64,000 nt of DNA from Pelomyxa schiedti (Eukaryota > Protista > Evosea): the NCBI GenBank assembly GCA_020536535.1, contig JAHLWZ010000840.1, forward strand, positions 1-64,000, in the 5' to 3' direction. The notes beneath the pieces are model-generated. The model was given only the letters and a program-made list of their open reading frames with translations. It had not been told where the DNA came from and searched no databases. A program made the position numbers and the translations under genes. Shown one piece after another: positions 52,901 to 58,990 of the stretch; positions within the stretch are counted from its first letter, which is position 1, and each line of letters begins with the position of its first letter.

Positions 52901-53916
52901 GTTAAGTCAAAGAATAGTTGAAGGATTCTAAATCATTAAGGCTGGAATCCCGCTCATGACAGACAGGCTATCGCTCGTGTGTGGCGTGATGGTCAAAAGA
53001 AGCCTGTTTTTGTTATTCCAACCTCTAAGATATGTCCTTACTTATAACACTCAAGATATACCGTCTCCTGAGCACTGGGACTATTGAAGAAAAAATATTC
53101 CAACGGCAATTGGCAAAGCAACACCTTTCAAGTAACCTGGTTGCTGATCATTTAGTTGAGCGGGCATCGTTTGAACCAGAATTTTTGCACAAGATTTTTA
53201 CCTTCAATTCTACAACACTATGTGATACCCATGATGCTATAGGATGTCAGTGCATTAATGAGGTAATATCAAATAGTTGTTTGTCAAAATCCTTTTTTTT
53301 TTCTAACGTATTTGCAGACAAGTGTCTCGAAGCCGGTACTCCTCCTACTATGTTTTTCAATTTTTCACTGCCAAAAGAATGCCGATGAACGGGCTCGTAA
53401 GTACCTTTCCCAATTGAAGCACACACCAGATGTGAAAACTGTCGGGGATACAATACTGTCAAGCCTTAGTGCACCTGTTTCCAAGGTTAATACTTTCGGT
53501 TTTTCTCACCTCAGACCCATCTTACACCTCAGATGATTTCCTTCGTCATGTGGGGAGGACACTCACCACAAGTAGACGCCCCCCCTGTATGCACTTCCAC
53601 GACCGTAACAACCCCCAGTTCCCCACCACGTGATGACCCCGCTGCCGATGACTACGAGTGGCTTGAGAAGGCTTTAGAGGAGGGAGGAGAACCCAATTCA
53701 CCATCGCCATCGCCATCACCACCACCAAAAACCAAGACACCCGATCATGATGACGACAAGGAAGAGGCGGATTCAGGATCAGCATCCAGCTCCAGCAGTG
53801 AAGAGAATAAGTCCAGTGATGCCAGTTCCGGCAGTAGCAGCAGCTCTGAGCAGGAAAGTGAACCTGAGGACAAACCACCGGCTCCACAGCCGAAGAGACT
53901 GCGCCGAAGACTATGA
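49925..53916 (+). CDS. RAD54/RAD54B-like SNF2-family DNA translocase
   Basis: [96 protein letters not shown]. Confidence 0.93.
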
Positions 53917-54046
53917 AAAACAAGTTTTTTGTTTGGTGTAAACCTCTTCCTTCCAAAACGCAACAAGAGAGTTTGTTTCGTTAAGTTAATTTTGTTTTGT
54001 TTTTGTCAATGAGAAACAGTTTGAGGGAGAGGCCTCCCAGTTGGAA

Positions 54047-56832
54047 TCAATCGTTTTCTGTGTGGATGTTCAGGGTGTATTTTGAGGCTTGGGCCAGTTT
54101 TGGGTTGGTGCTATTGGTGTGTGTCTTCAATTTTGGTGCTAAACACAACGTTTTGGCTCGAGTTTGAACGTCGTGATCCTGAATCTGGTGTAGAGTTAGG
54201 TTTCAGCAACGGTGTTCACTGTCATACAAGAGTCCCAGCAGCTACAACTAGGTTGAGGGCTATTCTTTCATCTTTTTCTGAATCTAGCATCTGTACCAAT
54301 TGAGAAAAACAGTTACGTGTACTGGACGCACTTGACAAACTGAAGTTATGCAATGTATTTTGCAGGCATCATTCTTTACAGTCGCAAGGCTGTAAGGGAG
54401 TGAGCAGAAAGAAATGATGAAGGAAAGTTGGAGGTGCACTTGACTAATAAGGCGGAAACAGCTGCTCGGAGAGAGATGTCAGGTGAAGGAATTGCGCCGG
54501 TTATTCTCCCCCACAAGTTTTGGCTTTCACAAAGGAAGATATATTCGGGGACACTTTACAAGTGTTATTCTGAGGAAGAAAACAAGGGAACTTACGAAAG
54601 AGCATTGACGGCAAGTCTCAAAGCGAGTAATTGATTTGAAAACGGGCTCGTTTTAGGTGCCAAGGCAAATGATCCTAGCTTTGAAATAAGATTCTAATTG
54701 CCCACACCCAAACGTACGATCAAGAATAGGAATCTTCCGCTGAACAAAATATGCAGCAACATTTGGGAAACAAAGCAGTAATCGAAAGATATCCAAAACT
54801 TATTAAGAACATTAAATAGGCCTAACGTGAAAGGGGCTACCTGGGAATGCACTCGTAATTTGGGTGGCTAGCATTGACGCAATAGGAAGAGCGTCAAGAA
54901 GTGGAAGTATATCCGACTCTTGAATATTCGGATTGCTCAAGTGTGCAATCAGAGATAGGATGGCAGATTGTTCCTTTGGCGAATATCGGGATTCCTGTCC
55001 GCTTGTTGATTGAGGGAGAAAATCAACACAGTTATAAGTGTAGGAGGTATTACGTTTTGGAAATTCATTGCAATAAATTTTTCTTTGAAGTTAGGAGGAA
55101 GGCTCTTCTTAAATTTGATTAATTTTACCTGCACTTGGATGAGTGTTTCATAAAAGGAATGAAGAGGGAACATTTGGTATTAAACTGCAGTTCAACTCTT
55201 GTGATTGTGCATCTGGGAGGAGCTGTAATTCTTGGGGGGTAGGGGGAGTCCCTAGCTTGGAATTATGCACAGCCGTTTTCACAGCTATTTGAAATGAATT
55301 GGGATGAAAAAGACTATGAGAAATGGTAGGTAATACATTTTTGCACATGAATCCAAAGCCTATTTGCTAAGGTCAAGGAATTCTCTAAAACATGAAGTCC
55401 TTGTCGGAGAAGGTACTTCTGAATCTCAGCTTGGATATTTTGCTCTGCAAGCAGTTAGAACAGATGTTTCCGCACCGTAGTTATTGTTAACCTGTGAAAT
55501 CGAAAGGGAAAAATGTAAGCTGACTCCCAACCATGATTGGTAAGACAAGGTCATAGTATCGTTGATCGTCGGGGTTTAGCTCCTTGACCCACCCTGGGTA
55601 TTGCTTAGAGAAGAGGAACTTTATTTCTTTTGAGACCTTGAACCACCATTGGCTCTTCTGCTGTCTCATCTGATTCTAAATATTCTTGAAGCTTTGGAGG
55701 TTTCACTTCTTCATCTACCAGGATATATTTCCTCTTCAGGGTTTCTTGATTGTCTAAAGTACTCGGATCGGTAGGGGGAAAATCTTTGAGATACACTCTG
55801 GGCAGATTTGTGAATTTATAATCCGACCCAACAACCGTCAAAAGAGGAACAAAGTGTTGCTGTAGATATTGAGTTGAAAGTCACCAAAAGGAATAAATGG
55901 TACATGAGATTCATGGTTCCAGGAAAGAAAAACGGGCCGCTTAGTGCATACATCAGGTTGAAGACGAAGTGGTAAAATGGTTGCTGCGGCACCTCCTCCA
56001 CCTTGCCCCAGTTCAGTCTTAGGCATTGAGACTTTGCTTTAGAATGGGTTAAGAGCATACATCTTTCAGGCCAGCAAAAATTACAATCGGACGACGAATT
56101 GCATTGGAAAGAGCCTGCACATGAATGTATTCAAGAGCCTGTCCATCAGTTTCGGCAATTTTCAAAACCTACAAAACAATCAGTCCAATACCAAAAGCAA
56201 CCCAGGAGCCCACGAAACCTGGTCCCAATCTCCCATAACCCTCTCTTGGTACCACTCTTTCTGGGCTGACATCTCTGAATGGACCAAGCTGCGCAAGAGC
56301 GGGTGATATTCATCCATCCCCCACAATGCAGTGCCCACAGCTCTAACGAGGCAGTTCCCGTCCCCTGTTGTAGTGTAGGGCACAACTAGCTGTGGAATAG
56401 GATCAATTCCATCATGCATAAATGCCCCAGTAAGGTACTCCTTTGTTTGTTTATTTTGTAGTGAGCCAAAAGTAAGACCACAAGAGGAAGGAGGTGGAGG
56501 GGGAAAGGGGGAAAAAAAAAAGTGGGACACACCACAGCTTCTTTGTCACAAAGAGCTTCTCGTTTCTTTGCACTAGCAACAAAAACAGGCGGGATCTAAG
56601 CAACGAGATTATGCCGAGATGCGTGCGTTCGTATTGATTTATATTGGAGTTATATGCCCCACGCGACTCGTCGTGTGATGCCAATCAAGCCTCTTACGGT
56701 TCATATTTTCAAAAGTTGTTTTTGGTTTGACACCTGAAACGTGGTGCTGGGGTCTGGGCGTGGCTCGGTTTTTACCAAGAGTTTCTTAGCCGTGCACAGA
56801 ACACAAATGCCCAACGACGTAGGGAGATGCAT
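54047..56832 (-). CDS. OTU-family (VCPIP1/A20-like) deubiquitinase fused to PFU and PUL domains
   Basis: OTU TGDGNCLVRAV, ALSNAIRRPIVI, YHFV; PFU-like YYDLVLPIMVG...FPFD...KYLLRQGL; PUL FPVLDIFRLLL, NQLLALRLAVN, NLVVAAGTL; 5' exons approximate. Confidence 0.8.
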
Positions 56833-57110
56833 GGGTTTTTTTTTTTTTCTTTTTCTGAGTTGGGAACCAAGTTGGGCCGGGGGAATTCATGAGGGAATCT
56901 TGTCATCTGAGGGGACTTCGGCAGCTTGATGTATGCCACGCGCACAAGGGATGGTGGAGGATTGGCAGATGGGATCCACAAGACCTTGATCGGGAATCAG
57001 CTGGAATCTCTGAAAATGAAGTTTTGAGAGAAGCTTGATTCTTCTTCTAACCAGTTGATAACAGTGGTCTTAGAAGAATACGAAAAACAAACGAAATTCT
57101 CGCTCCTAGG

Positions 57111-58990
57111 ATGCATTCCGCAGTCGCGCACGCCCAATCTAACAACTTCGCCCTGCTGGCCGTATGTCTATCTAACGACACGCTTTGCGTTTTTGTTTTT
57201 TTTTTTTTCCGGCGTTTTTTTTTTTCCCTTCTCATGTGTGGGCAATGTTGCTAACGAATATATATACAAAAAAAAAAAATTAAAATTAAAAAAAAAGTTT
57301 GGAGCCCAGCTTATGATACTGATTCTCTTTGGATGCTGCACTGAGTATTGTGACGATGCAAAGGTAACAACTGGCGACCCTGTGGACCACGAGTACGAGG
57401 GCTTACATGAGTACACATACTTCAGCGACGTTCACATCATGATCTTTGTTGGATTCGGGTTCCTTATGACTTTTTTGAAGAAATACGGATTTAGTGCTGT
57501 TGCCTTCAATTTCTTCCTGAGTGCTTTGGCGTTTCAGTGGGCAATTTTAGTAAATGGGTTCTGGAACTGTGTTAATGCTCATGAGTGGGTCAGGATACCA
57601 GTCTCCATTGAATCGTGAGATCCCCCTTAAACTCATCTTAACCCTAATGATACACAAGAATTATTGAGGGTGACTTTGCTGCTGGTTCCGTTATGATTTC
57701 GTTTGGTGCTGTCATAGGAAAAGTTTCCACTGTTCAACTGACTATAATGACCATAATACATCTAATTGTTTATGGTGCAAATAAAGTTATATTGGAGAGG
57801 GAACTCGAGATTGTAGGTAGAGTGCATTGTCCTTCATCCCTTTGCTTTTTTGTTTTTTAAATATTAGACAAGATATTGGAGGATCCCTTGTCATCCATGC
57901 CTTTGGTGCCTATTTTGGCCTCACTGTGAGTAGGATTGTTTCTCCAAAGGCTTCAAAAACGAATGACGACTGCGGCTCTGTTTATCACTCCGACCTTTTT
58001 GCCATGATTGGTATACTTACCATGCATTTAAGTCGTTCATTAGAACCAATGCTTAGCTCAAAATAGGAACTATATTCCTCTGGATCATGTGGCCCAGCTT
58101 CAACGCTGCTCTTGCTGGAGAAAATTCTAAGCAGGAACGAACAATTCTAAATACAGCCATCAGCTTGGCGGCCTGCTGCGTTGTAGCCTTTGCTTTGTCA
58201 CAAATGACACGGCCCCATCATCACTTTGACATGGTATGCTTCCATTGGTCTCCATTTATAACACATTTGTAGGTTGATATTCAAAATGCCACGCTCGCCG
58301 GAGGTGTTGCCGTCGGCGCATCAGCATGCATGAATCTGTATTTAGTTGGTGCAATGGCAATTGGTATCACAGCAGGAACAATTAGCACCTTGGGATTCCG
58401 CTATCTCCAACCATTCCTACAGAACCGTTTTGGATTACATGACACTTGTGGAGTTTGTATTCAATTTGTCTTACCTTTTCGCTCACGGGCCAATAGGTCC
58501 ACAACTTGCACGGTATGCCAGGTCTGCTTGGTGGGTTGTGTGCCGTCATAGCAGCTGCCATTGTAAAGCAGGAGGATTATGGGACAACTGAAAGCGAGGC
58601 ACTTGAAAACATTGGCGTTGTTTTCCCAGAAATGGGAACAGGAAGGTCCGCCAGTGAACAAGCTCTTTGCCAGGTAACACATTACAATCCTAGTATAATG
58701 ATAACAATAGCATACCTAAAACTAACAAACAACAAACAAACAAAAAAAAAAAAAAAACACAGTTAGCGGGAATTGGCGTAACTCTCGGAATGGCCCTCGT
58801 TGGTGGCGCTATTGCCGGTGGAGTACTGTCCATACCTGGGATTCAAGGAAAGCCCGAGACGTTCTACCACGACATGGAGTACTGGCACATGCCCGACTGG
58901 GACACCGACCTCGAGAAGGCCGCTGCTCTCGAAGGCGCGGACGCTCCCGCCGACGAGTCCAAGGACAAGGACAAGGACGTGTCTCTCTAA
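57111..58990 (+). CDS. Rh-type ammonium transporter (Amt/Mep/Rh family)
   Basis: [76 protein letters not shown]. Confidence 0.95.

What the first reader, a model, noticed from the sequence alone, without database searches (positions are those of the whole stretch)
54047..56832. OTU deubiquitinase fused to the PFU-PUL module of PLAA/Doa1: a one-chain p97 cofactor
Seen: an OTU domain with intact Cys (GDGNCL, ~56350) and His (YHFV, ~55970), then a PFU-like segment (~55330-55600) and clear PUL motifs (FPVLDIFRLLL, NQLLALRLAVN, LVVAAGTL), all on one strand with no WD40 propeller. Known: PFU binds ubiquitin, PUL binds the p97/Cdc48 C-terminal tail, PLAA/Doa1 is WD40-PFU-PUL, and in mammals PLAA acts with the separate OTU enzyme YOD1 and p97 on damaged lysosomes. 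Inference: this lineage has fused ubiquitin capture, p97 docking and chain trimming into one protein. I do not recognise this architecture as described.
Basis: partly seen in the sequence, partly recalled or inferred. Interest (0 to 1): 0.8.

Follow-up and report, generated by a model that had tools for sequence, protein, structure and literature searches.

The report
Amoeba deubiquitinase carrying PLAA's Cdc48-docking module
This amoeba gene really does join a ubiquitin-removing enzyme to the two domains that normally tether the adaptor PLAA/Doa1 to the protein-unfolding machine Cdc48/p97. The same fusion occurs in many other amoebae, nobody seems to have described it, and it hints that a "novel" p97-binding domain of the human enzyme VCPIP1 is a disguised copy of one of those two domains.

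Summary
Window 54047-56832 (minus strand) is a 17-exon, 637-aa gene of Pelomyxa schiedti (public protein KAH3746291.1, "hypothetical"). RNA contigs show 13 of its 16 introns as spliced joints.

- **Domains:** an A20/VCPIP1-type OTU domain (Cys84, His204), a short degenerate PFU domain (about 281-356) and a PUL domain (about 382-637).
the His ("YHFV") is a wrong-frame string. The true His is in "HFVPLL", about 115 nt downstream.
- **PUL:** it keeps six of the eight residues I could map from PLAA's p97-tail pocket.
- **Distribution:** the architecture is not peculiar to this lineage. It occurs in Balamuthia, Acanthamoeba (where the annotation splits it in two), Luapelamoeba, Clydonella, Rhizamoeba, a Pelomyxa paralogue and several metagenomic proteins.
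- **Same genome:** it also keeps a canonical WD40-PFU-PUL gene.
- **Literature:** my searches of the open-access library found no description.
- **Nearest solved relative:** the OTU is closest to VCPIP1, not YOD1.
- **New lead:** VCPIP1's "novel" D2-binding domain (VCPID) is the next-best structural match to this PFU, so VCPID may be a cryptic PFU.

Binding to Cdc48 and deubiquitinase activity remain inferred. Another reader of this scan noted the same stretch earlier in another window.

The parts
54047..56832 (-). Whole coding region, ATG to TGA: 17 exons, 637 aa. Identical to public protein KAH3746291.1 (P0001).
56734..56832 (-). Exon 1 (aa 1-33). Holds the family's N-terminal CxxC and 'TTFxLP' motifs.
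   Evidence: Frame and donor. The joint to exon 2 rests only on a 15-nt loose end of an RNA contig. Motifs conserved in the family.
56533..56595 (-). Exon 2 (aa 34-54). Contains Asp50, a candidate third catalytic residue.
   Evidence: Joint 56439|56532. Asp/Glu in 12 of 15 family members.
56219..56440 (-). Exon 3 (aa 55-128): the OTU Cys loop GDGNC. Cys84 codon is 56353-56351.
   Evidence: Pfam OTU on the exon alone, E 1.4e-4. Cys invariant in 15/15 members. Aligned to the OTUD7B catalytic Cys loop.
56061..56168 (-). Exon 4 (aa 129-164): OTU middle part (LEYIHVQALSNAIRRPIVIF).
   Evidence: RNA joints on both sides..
55904..56017 (-). Exon 5 (aa 165-202): OTU part.
   Evidence: RNA joints. Frames.
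55637..55859 (-). Exon 6 (aa 203-277): catalytic His204 (codon 55856-55854, 'HFVPLL'), the end of the OTU domain and an acidic linker.
   Evidence: RNA joints. His invariant in 15/15. Aligned to A20 'HFVPLV'.
55492..55593 (-). Exon 7 (aa 277-311): beta-strand half of the PFU-like domain (YYDLVLPIMVGSQLTFFPFDF).
   Evidence: RNA joints. Leave-Pelomyxa-out PFU profile hits aa 284-328, 12.9 bits. AF2 model.
55337..55444 (-). Exon 8 (aa 311-347): the two helices of the PFU-like domain.
55172..55284 (-). Exon 9 (aa 347-384): linker and the start of the PUL N-terminal extension ('IPN').
   Evidence: Start backed by an 11-nt loose end. The end is inferred (donor aat|gttccc, 43-nt intron). It agrees with the public model and with the conserved Pro383.
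55054..55128 (-). Exon 10 (aa 385-409): PUL N-terminal extension.
   Evidence: 3' joint 54993|55053 in RNA. The 5' boundary is inferred.
54047..54994 (-). Exons 11-17 (aa 410-637 plus stop): Armadillo-like PUL domain. Exons: 54994-54841, 54798-54718, 54674-54596, 54553-54440, 54389-54332, 54290-54228, 54184-54047. Pocket residues: F459, D463 (codon 54793-54791), R466, L503, L504, R507.
   Evidence: All six introns seen in one RNA contig (record 9). Pfam PUL 2.3e-19. PLAA 3ebb 4e-8 with alignment. AF2 pLDDT 85.7, Foldseek 3ebb TM 0.79.

Best explanation
The gene encodes an active-looking cysteine deubiquitinase of the A20/VCPIP1 branch of the OTU family. Its C-terminal two thirds are the PFU-PUL unit otherwise known from the Cdc48/p97 adaptor PLAA/Doa1/Ufd3. 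It belongs to a family spread across Amoebozoa.

Proposed mechanism:
- The concave groove of the PUL domain holds the hydrophobic-Tyr motif of the flexible C-terminal tail of Cdc48. That places the protein at the D2 (exit) face of the hexamer.
- The small PFU domain next to it either holds ubiquitin, as in PLAA/Doa1, or packs on the D2 ring, as the similarly folded VCPID of VCPIP1 does.
- The OTU domain, on a ~50-residue linker, trims or removes ubiquitin chains from substrates that Cdc48 handles.

Shown here: the gene structure and its transcription, domain identities, conservation of Cys84/His204 and of most of the PLAA p97-pocket, and the family's distribution.

Inferred: deubiquitinase activity, Cdc48 binding and the role of the PFU.
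For: **Single gene.**
- Spliced RNA contigs give 13 joints, and two more are supported by loose ends.
- The model is identical to public protein P0001.
- Orthologues sit in contiguous single ORFs on genomic contigs (P0089 908 aa, P0080 728 aa). P0089's product carries both OTU and PUL, so the fusion does not depend on my splice model.

**OTU.**
- Pfam 46.5 bits.
- PDB sequence hits: OTUD7B 5e-16, A20 6.5e-11, VCPIP1 3e-9.
- The family profile's best PDB hit is VCPIP1, 134.5 bits, against OTUD7B 111 and A20 109.
- hhalign to mollusc VCPIP1 161-387 gives Prob 99.8.
- Cys84 and His204 are invariant in 15/15 members.

**PUL.**
- Pfam 70.2 bits and PLAA 3ebb 4e-8.
- AF2 pLDDT 85.7, with Foldseek top hit 3ebb at TM 0.79.
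- The residues that PMC2804184 names as the Leu-Tyr pocket (F611, D615, R618, L657, L658, R661) are F459, D463, R466, L503, L504, R507 here. The Asp is kept in 13/15 members.

**PFU.**
- Pfam-significant in three orthologues (P0004 52 bits, P0107 29.5, P0049 27.4). Four more orthologues and the paralogue P0002 hit below the cut-off.
- The PFU-only family profile hits only Doa1 (1.7e-7) and PLAA PFU (5e-6) in the PDB.

**Precedent.** The same genome has a PPPDE peptidase-PUL gene, and PPPDE-thioredoxin-PUL is a large fungal cluster. Tethering ubiquitin-like-protein peptidases through PUL therefore recurs.
Against: - No activity or binding data exist.
- Pfam PFU does not hit this copy at E<=0.1. 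The leave-out profile gives only 12.9 bits. The family lacks Pfam PFU positions 1-40.
- Two pocket positions differ: A654->S500 and N697->S541.
- The two Cdc48 paralogue tails, read from the genome without RNA support, end ...NIYDDE and ...PLGDGL, not ...DDLYG.
- No RNA contig bridges exon 8 to exon 10, so for this copy the physical continuity of one transcript across the OTU and PUL halves rests on an 11-nt loose end, an open frame and homology.
- The third catalytic residue is not pinned down.
Confidence: 0.72

Rival explanations
1. The protein is a real OTU-PFU-PUL deubiquitinase, but its PUL groove binds something other than the Cdc48 tail. It would then work independently of Cdc48.
For: PMC2804184 argues that the conserved, positively charged PUL groove extends beyond the p97 pocket and probably has other ligands, and that Doa1 has Cdc48-independent functions. 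The Pelomyxa Cdc48 tails lack a terminal Leu-Tyr-Gly. Pocket position N697 is not kept.
Against: The pocket floor and main walls (D463, L504, F459, R466, R507) are kept. One Cdc48 paralogue keeps an Ile-Tyr near its end, and PMC2804184 suggests PUL may also bind non-terminal LYG motifs. The nearest OTU relative is itself a p97-bound enzyme.
Confidence: 0.17
2. The middle domain of this copy no longer acts as a ubiquitin-binding PFU. It is a degenerate spacer, or a D2-docking domain like the VCPID of VCPIP1.
Confidence: 0.35
3. The fusion is an artefact: two neighbouring genes (an OTU gene and a PFU-PUL gene) were merged by gene prediction.
For: There is no RNA coverage of 55091-55336, and one splice junction (E9/E10) is inferred. 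The Acanthamoeba annotation does list two separate genes.
Against: The PFU-like domain (exons 7-8) is joined to the OTU His exon in the same RNA contigs (records 2 and 6). The frame stays open through exons 8-10. Orthologues are single uninterrupted ORFs on genomic contigs. A 771-aa single ORF covers both Acanthamoeba models at 98.6-99.7% identity. 14 of 15 family members carry both OTU and PUL.
Confidence: 0.03

Closest known systems
PLAA / Doa1 / Ufd3 / Lub1 (WD40-PFU-PUL adaptor of p97/Cdc48)
   Same: It has a homologous PFU-PUL unit in the same order. The PUL is Armadillo-like and keeps the Leu-Tyr pocket residues. The family profile hits PLAA PUL at 2.9e-34 and the Doa1 PFU-PUL structures at 2e-19.
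   Different: An OTU protease stands where the seven-bladed WD40 propeller should be. The PFU lacks the first ~40 Pfam positions. The same genome has a separate canonical WD40-PFU-PUL gene on contig C934, so this is not the PLAA orthologue.
VCPIP1 / VCIP135 (metazoan p97-bound OTU deubiquitinase)
   Same: It is the best solved match to the family's OTU profile (134.5 bits). The alignment is collinear beyond the Pfam OTU limits on both sides. In both proteins the OTU is followed by a small domain of four strands and two helices, and then by a p97-binding module. Balamuthia's orthologue is even annotated 'VCIP135'.
   Different: Pfam finds no VCIP135_N domain and no UBX-like domain here, and PUL takes the place of the UBX-like domain. 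The VCPID-PFU similarity is weak at sequence level: hhalign P 5e-4, and no Pfam hit. Every VCPIP1 orthologue that carried an organism name was metazoan.
Otu1 / YOD1 with PLAA and p97
   Same: The logic is the same: an OTU enzyme, a PFU-PUL ubiquitin/p97 adaptor and p97 acting together.
   Different: By established knowledge, YOD1/Otu1 is a different OTU subfamily with its own UBX-like domain that binds the p97 N domain. No YOD1/Otu1 chain appeared among the solved-structure hits; the hits are A20-clade enzymes plus weaker OTUD5 and OTUD1.
PPPDE (Peptidase_C97)-thioredoxin-PUL proteins
   Same: Here too a cysteine peptidase of the ubiquitin-like-protein world is fused to a C-terminal PUL. The architecture is present in fungi, and a Peptidase_C97 + PUL gene lies in this genome on C856.
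   Different: The peptidase fold is different, and there is no PFU.

Membership tests
OTU deubiquitinases, A20/OTUD7/TRABID/VCPIP1 clade | Pfam OTU above the gathering score, with best similarity to A20-clade members | tested here: met
   46.5 bits against a cut-off of 23.3. OTUD7B 5e-16, A20 6.5e-11, VCPIP1 3e-9, TRABID 6e-7; OTUD1 and OTUD5 only 0.06-0.2.
OTU deubiquitinases, A20/OTUD7/TRABID/VCPIP1 clade | Catalytic Cys in the GDGNC loop and catalytic His in an 'HFVPL'-type strand | tested here: met
   Cys84 and His204 align to the OTUD7B and A20 motifs. Both are invariant in 15/15 family members.
OTU deubiquitinases, A20/OTUD7/TRABID/VCPIP1 clade | Third (acidic) catalytic residue upstream of the Cys, as in A20 | tested here: inconclusive
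   Asp50 lies 34 residues upstream and is Asp/Glu in 12 of 15 members. It was not aligned to a solved structure, and the OTU domain was not modelled.
OTU deubiquitinases, A20/OTUD7/TRABID/VCPIP1 clade | Isopeptidase activity on ubiquitin | not testable with these tools
   Needs an enzyme assay.
PUL domain | Pfam PUL above the gathering score, and the Armadillo-like fold of PLAA 3EBB | tested here: met
   70.2 bits against 25.5. AF2 pLDDT 85.7. Foldseek top hits are 3ebb chains, TM 0.74-0.79.
PUL domain | Residues of the p97 Leu804/Tyr805 pocket (PMC2804184) | tested here: met
   F611, D615, R618, L657, L658, R661 correspond to F459, D463, R466, L503, L504, R507. A654->S and N697->S differ. The N-terminal extension residues (N547, Q550, I551, K554) were aligned by eye only.
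PUL domain | Binds the C-terminal tail of Cdc48/p97 | not testable with these tools
   The complex prediction gave no verdict. The Pelomyxa Cdc48 tails read ...NIYDDE and ...PLGDGL.
PFU domain | Pfam PFU above the gathering score | tested here: not met
   No hit in P0001 at E<=0.1. The paralogue P0002 gets 17.4 bits against a cut-off of 26.2. It is met in orthologues P0004 (52.2), P0107 (29.5) and P0049 (27.4), always covering only profile positions ~41-111.
PFU domain | Four-stranded sheet plus two helices, as in PLAA 2K89 and Doa1 3L3F | tested here: met
PFU domain | Binds ubiquitin | not testable with these tools
   Needs a binding assay.
PLAA/Doa1/Ufd3 orthologues | N-terminal seven-bladed WD40 propeller before the PFU-PUL unit | tested here: not met
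   The N-terminal 230 residues are an OTU domain. A separate gene with WD40, PFU and PUL lies on contig C934.
VCPIP1/VCIP135 | VCIP135_N domain (PF19437) before the OTU, and a UBX-like domain after it | tested here: not met
   Pfam finds neither in P0001, while both are found in mollusc VCPIP1 P0117. Only the last ~40 residues before the OTU align.
VCPIP1/VCIP135 | D2-binding VCPID (four strands plus two helices) after the OTU | tested here: inconclusive

The most novel reading that the evidence does not exclude
The 'novel' VCP-interacting domain of human VCPIP1 (VCPID, also called UFD1; aa ~589-666) may be a diverged PFU domain. Two cryo-EM papers report that it has no structural relative in the PDB.

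The amoebozoan OTU-PFU-PUL proteins would then be the sister or ancestral form of VCPIP1. They have the same OTU type and the same small domain after it, still recognisable as PFU, with PUL (binding the C-terminal tail) where animals have a UBX-like domain (binding the N domain).

By my reading of the alignments, the residues VCPIP1 uses to grip the D2 ring correspond to signature positions of the PFU. Asn621-x-Tyr623 at the start of helix A would match the PFU 'Asn-Pro-Tyr'. Phe638 in the loop would match 'Pro-x-Ser-Tyr'. If that holds, the PFU domains of PLAA and Doa1 may also touch the D2 face of p97.
Probability: 0.45. Interest if true: 0.75.

Novelty: new variant of a known kind. Interest (0 to 1): 0.62.

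Why it matters
How Cdc48/p97 hands over ubiquitinated substrates depends on which ubiquitin-editing enzymes sit at which face of the hexamer: whether chains are extended, trimmed or removed, and whether ubiquitin is recycled. In yeast and animals the tail-binding adaptor (Doa1/PLAA) and the deubiquitinases are separate proteins.

This family joins them in one chain. That gives a compact natural system for testing whether docking at the C-terminal tail is enough to couple unfolding to deubiquitination at the pore exit.

It also links PLAA's PFU with VCPIP1's unexplained D2-binding domain. If that link holds, it gives the domain a family, dates the VCPIP1-type enzyme to before the split of animals and amoebae, and predicts a new p97 contact for PLAA.

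In practical terms, several public annotations need correcting:
- the Pelomyxa protein is labelled 'hypothetical';
- its paralogue is labelled 'ubiquitin-conjugating enzyme E2 N';
- the Acanthamoeba gene is split into two models.

Tried and rejected
- **Pfam exon by exon**. It gave only weak OTU and a 0.13 PUL hit. The exons are too short, so this was superseded once the public protein P0001 was found.
- **My own joined exon model.** I did not send it to any search or folding tool. All whole-protein work used P0001, a database protein returned. I showed it to contain every exon translation in order by comparing the exons one at a time.
- **Word-index searches** with the family alignment A1 and with P0004.
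- **Complex prediction** of PUL (aa 385-637) with the last 32 residues of the Cdc48 paralogue on C1482. No verdict; not used as evidence either way.
- **ESM Atlas by features** for the PFU-like part. No usable hit.
- **Foldseek on the PFU-PUL model**. The PUL filled the list, so the PFU needed its own model.
- **VCPID against sequence methods.** Pfam on 17 VCPID segments found no PFU. HMM-versus-sequence searches between VCPID and the amoebozoan PFU scored about zero. hhalign of VCPID against the loosely aligned full-length family alignment failed.
- **OTU phylogeny.** I considered a tree to test VCPIP1 orthology but did not build it. Only one VCPIP1 lineage and one or two A20-like sequences were in hand as named references, and other protist OTUs with other partners (E2 fusion, WW/EF-hand) score higher against the family profile than VCPIP1 does. 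Orthology is therefore open.
- **YOD1-PLAA fusion reading.** Rejected, because the OTU is of the A20 clade.
Full report
**What is in the sequence**

The region is a minus-strand gene of a eukaryote with very short introns. Reading the three minus frames gave a chain of short open segments with GT..AG boundaries.

Contigs of three single-cell RNA runs were laid on 53900-57100, together with the probable source DNA run. All come from one study, whose RNA runs are labelled "protist metagenome". They show 13 spliced joints, all CT..AC on the plus strand.

Two more junctions are supported by short loose ends that match the predicted neighbouring exon exactly:
- 15 nt beyond 56597 match 56750-56736, giving exon 1 to exon 2.
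- 11 nt before 55337 match 55284-55274, giving exon 8 to exon 9.

One junction has no RNA support. It is exon 9 to exon 10, with donor aat|gttccc at 55172 and acceptor tgcag| before 55128, a 43-nt intron.

The model has 17 exons, 1914 nt and 637 codons.

**The public protein**

A full HMMER search with exon 3 alone (by reference) returned a 637-aa protein with 100% identity at residues 55-128 (P0001). This is KAH3746291.1, "hypothetical protein Pelo_12319 [Pelomyxa schiedti]".

I compared each exon translation with it separately. All 17 occur in order, with only the split codons between them. The public annotation therefore uses the same model, including the inferred junction.

All whole-protein analyses use P0001.

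- **GDGNCL:** correct. The Cys84 codon is 56353-56351.
- **The His:** wrong. "YHFV" near 55970 is a wrong-frame string inside exon 5. The real catalytic His is His204 in "QHFVPLL" (55856-55854), at the start of exon 6. This is the A20-type "HFVPL" motif.
- **"FPVLDIFRLLL":** real, but spliced across an intron.
- **"NQLLALRLAVN" and "LVVAAGTL":** real.
- **The PFU-like stretch:** this is exons 7-8.
- **WD40:** none is present.

**Domains**

Pfam on P0001 gives OTU at 6.7e-12 (46.5 bits) and PUL at 2.3e-19 (70.2 bits), and no PFU.

Against solved structures, the OTU part matches:

| Structure | E-value |
|---|---|
| OTUD7B | 5e-16 |
| A20 | 6.5e-11 |
| VCPIP1 | 3e-9 |
| TRABID | 6e-7 |

So the OTU belongs to the A20 clade and not to the Otu1/YOD1 type.

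The C-terminal part matches the PUL of human PLAA (3ebb, 4e-8). Using that alignment and the pocket described in PMC2804184:
- F611, D615, R618, L657, L658 and R661 are F459, D463, R466, L503, L504 and R507 here.
- A654 is Ser500 and N697 is Ser541.

An AlphaFold2 model of residues 265-637 (pLDDT 85.7) has the four 3ebb chains as its best Foldseek matches, with TM 0.74-0.79 by target.

**The PFU question**

The PFU is the weakest of the three domains in this copy.

Across the family, 6 of 15 members hit Pfam PFU at E<=0.01:
- Three are above the gathering score: Balamuthia P0004 (52 bits), Rhizamoeba P0107 (29.5) and P0049 (27.4).
- The Pelomyxa paralogue P0002 reaches 17.4 bits.
- P0001 gets nothing.
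- All hits cover only profile positions ~41-111.

A profile built without the two Pelomyxa proteins finds P0001 residues 284-328 at 12.9 bits and P0002 at 26.8 bits, in the collinear place.

A profile of the PFU-like segments of 12 members hits only Doa1 (1.7e-7) and PLAA PFU (5e-6) in the whole PDB; the next hit is at 0.064. The PFU+PUL profile hits the Doa1 PFU-PUL crystal structures at 2e-19.

I conclude that this is a short, degenerate PFU. Whether it still binds ubiquitin is open.

**A family, not a one-off**

Among the hits, local profiles and Pfam show OTU+PUL, mostly with the PFU-like block between, in:
- a Pelomyxa paralogue on contig C427 (P0002, 36% identical, misnamed "ubiquitin-conjugating enzyme E2 N");
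- Balamuthia mandrillaris (P0004, named "VCIP135");
- Luapelamoeba hula (P0010);
- Clydonella (P0070, P0104);
- Rhizamoeba saxonica (P0107);
- P0089, from assembly GCA_040384145.1;
- several metagenomic or run-assembled proteins (P0012, P0021, P0026, P0033, P0049, P0052, P0115). P0080, found in two gut metagenomes (one of them human), has OTU and PFU by Pfam and PUL only by the family profile.

In Acanthamoeba castellanii the annotation has two consecutively numbered models: ELR19052.1 "OTU-like cysteine protease" and ELR19051.1 "PUL domain containing protein". They match residues 1-324 and 348-771 of a single 771-aa ORF from a run assembly (P0113) at 99.7% and 98.6% identity.

P0089 and P0080 are uninterrupted ORFs on genomic contigs, so the fusion does not depend on splice prediction.

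Cys84 and His204 are invariant in all 15 aligned members. The pocket Asp is kept in 13.

The named members belong to Archamoebae, Discosea and Tubulinea (my own taxonomic knowledge), so the family is probably ancestral to Amoebozoa. I could not establish whether it exists outside them, because the word-index searches were swamped.

**Other PUL genes in the same genome**

The own-genome searches show three further things.
- A canonical WD40-PFU-PUL gene lies on contig C934. Pfam PFU hits at 1.4e-8 and 4.9e-8, WD40 repeats lie upstream, and PFU/PUL exons are collinear.
- A gene with Peptidase_C97 (PPPDE) lies upstream of a PUL exon on contig C856.
- The ESM Atlas search shows PPPDE-thioredoxin-PUL as a large fungal cluster.

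So the OTU fusion is an addition to PLAA, not a replacement of it. PUL is used repeatedly to tether ubiquitin-family peptidases.

**Mechanism**

The best-supported reading is a Cdc48-docked deubiquitinase.
- PUL takes the hydrophobic-Tyr motif of the Cdc48 tail.
- That places the enzyme at the D2 face of the hexamer.
- The OTU domain, on a ~50-residue acidic linker, edits chains on substrates.

Caveats:
- I read the tails of the two Cdc48 paralogues (contigs C1482 and C666, identified by the CDC48 and CDC48_2 family models) from the genome only. They end ...NNAMEPNIYDDE and ...GMGDFDEAPLGDGL.
- One paralogue keeps Ile-Tyr three residues from the end. The other has no Tyr.
- PMC2804184 suggests, from its structure, that PUL may also bind non-terminal LYG motifs. 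That suggestion is not evidence for binding here.
- A complex prediction with the first tail gave no verdict and is not used.

**The link to VCPIP1**

Three observations point the same way.

1. With family profiles, VCPIP1 becomes the best solved match to the OTU region. It scores 119 and 134.5 bits, against 109-111 for OTUD7B and A20 and 89-90 for TRABID. hhalign to a mollusc VCPIP1 (P0117) covers residues 161-387 with probability 99.8. That reaches beyond the Pfam OTU limits on both sides.

   - VCPID (called UFD1 by Liao et al.) follows the OTU in VCPIP1. It binds two D2 domains of VCP through N621, Y623 and F638, and it raises DUB activity.
[quoted passage not shown] That is the PFU topology.

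3. I aligned VCPID from 17 metazoan VCPIP1 proteins (A6).
   - hhalign against the amoebozoan PFU alignment gives 60 collinear columns, P 4.9e-4, probability 32%.
   - Against a full-length VCPIP1 profile, the best hit of the PFU profile lands on VCPID with score 30.3. Thirty column-shuffled controls had a median of 14.4 and a maximum of 18.0.
   - VCPID against the PFU+PUL alignment again lands on the PFU (P 0.022).
   - By my reading of the alignments, VCPIP1 "GKEYD...NSNVYDVA..L...FPGEFGSE.LVQKVV..IL" lines up with PFU "GK.YD...DNPY.AA..FL...LP.SY.DQVV.FIL". The D2-contact residues N621/Y623 would then fall on the PFU Asn-Pro-Tyr, and F638 on the loop Tyr.

Against the link:
- Pfam PFU does not hit VCPID.
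- HMM-to-sequence scores are about zero.
- hhalign against the loosely aligned full-length family alignment fails.
- Other protist OTUs with other partners score higher against the family profile than VCPIP1 does, so orthology is not shown.

I put the VCPID-PFU homology at about 45%.

In the Pelomyxa copies the Tyr of that motif is lost (Gln-Asn-Ile-Gln in P0001), while several orthologues keep Lys-Pro-Tyr. The D2 helix that VCPID contacts (KYEMFAQTL in human VCP) is intact in both Pelomyxa Cdc48 genes.

**Novelty**

Each domain is known. A p97-bound OTU enzyme is known, and a peptidase-PUL fusion is known. The OTU-PFU-PUL combination is present in public databases but is unnamed, misnamed or split.

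I found no paper describing it in the held open-access library. The only paper found holding all three terms (OTU domain, PFU and PUL domain) is a general p97 review. The library misses most subscription journals, so an earlier mention elsewhere cannot be excluded.

I class it as a new variant of a known kind, with one more novel lead, VCPID as a cryptic PFU.

Another first-stage reader noted the same stretch in an overlapping window (s1-595716). No follow-up on it was on record.

Noticed in passing
G000:C856:9258-10626 (minus strand; locus L026): A second kind of peptidase-PUL gene in the same genome. A Peptidase_C97 (PPPDE) exon (E 6e-14) lies upstream of PUL-like exons. PPPDE-thioredoxin-PUL is a known fungal architecture according to the ESM Atlas clusters.
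   Followed up: partly
G000:C934:8099-11500 and C934:4954-5076 (minus strand; loci L025, L028, L004): The canonical WD40-PFU-PUL (PLAA/Doa1-type) gene is here. A second Pfam PFU hit (E 4.8e-7, inside a 325-aa open frame) lies about 4.7 kb further along the same strand, possibly a second PFU-containing gene.
   Followed up: partly
G000:C1482:3294-3473 (+) and G000:C666 near 80961 (-): Both Cdc48 paralogues lack the canonical C-terminal Leu-Tyr-Gly. One ends ...NIYDDE. The other ends ...PLGDGL, where the last codons CTA TAA read Leu-stop. These were read from DNA only, without RNA support.
   Followed up: partly
Acanthamoeba castellanii proteins P0020 (ELR19052.1) and P0110 (ELR19051.1) versus P0113: The Neff annotation splits the orthologue into an 'OTU-like cysteine protease' and a 'PUL domain containing protein'. 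A 771-aa single ORF from a run assembly covers both at 98.6-99.7% identity.
   Followed up: yes
P0001 residues 10-35 (window 56728-56805, minus strand) and the family alignment A5: Most family members start with Met-Cys-x-x-Cys, followed by 'LP..TTFxLP'. The Pelomyxa protein has eight extra residues in front. The role of the CxxC (metal site, or lipidation) is unknown.
   Followed up: no
P0031 (738 aa) among the hits; P0087 (734 aa) aligns the same way but was not scanned: P0031 is an A20-clade OTU fused to a ubiquitin-conjugating (UQ_con) domain, and P0116 is WW + OTU + EF-hand. Such OTU-E2 fusions may explain why the Pelomyxa paralogue P0002 is misnamed 'ubiquitin-conjugating enzyme E2 N'.
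   Followed up: partly
window 53032-53916 (+) and 57055-58066 (+): The flanking genes lie on the other strand. One is the 3' end of a RAD54/SNF2-like helicase gene with a Ser/Asp/Glu-rich tail. The other is the 5' exons of an Rh-type ammonium transporter. Both were recognised by eye only.
   Followed up: no
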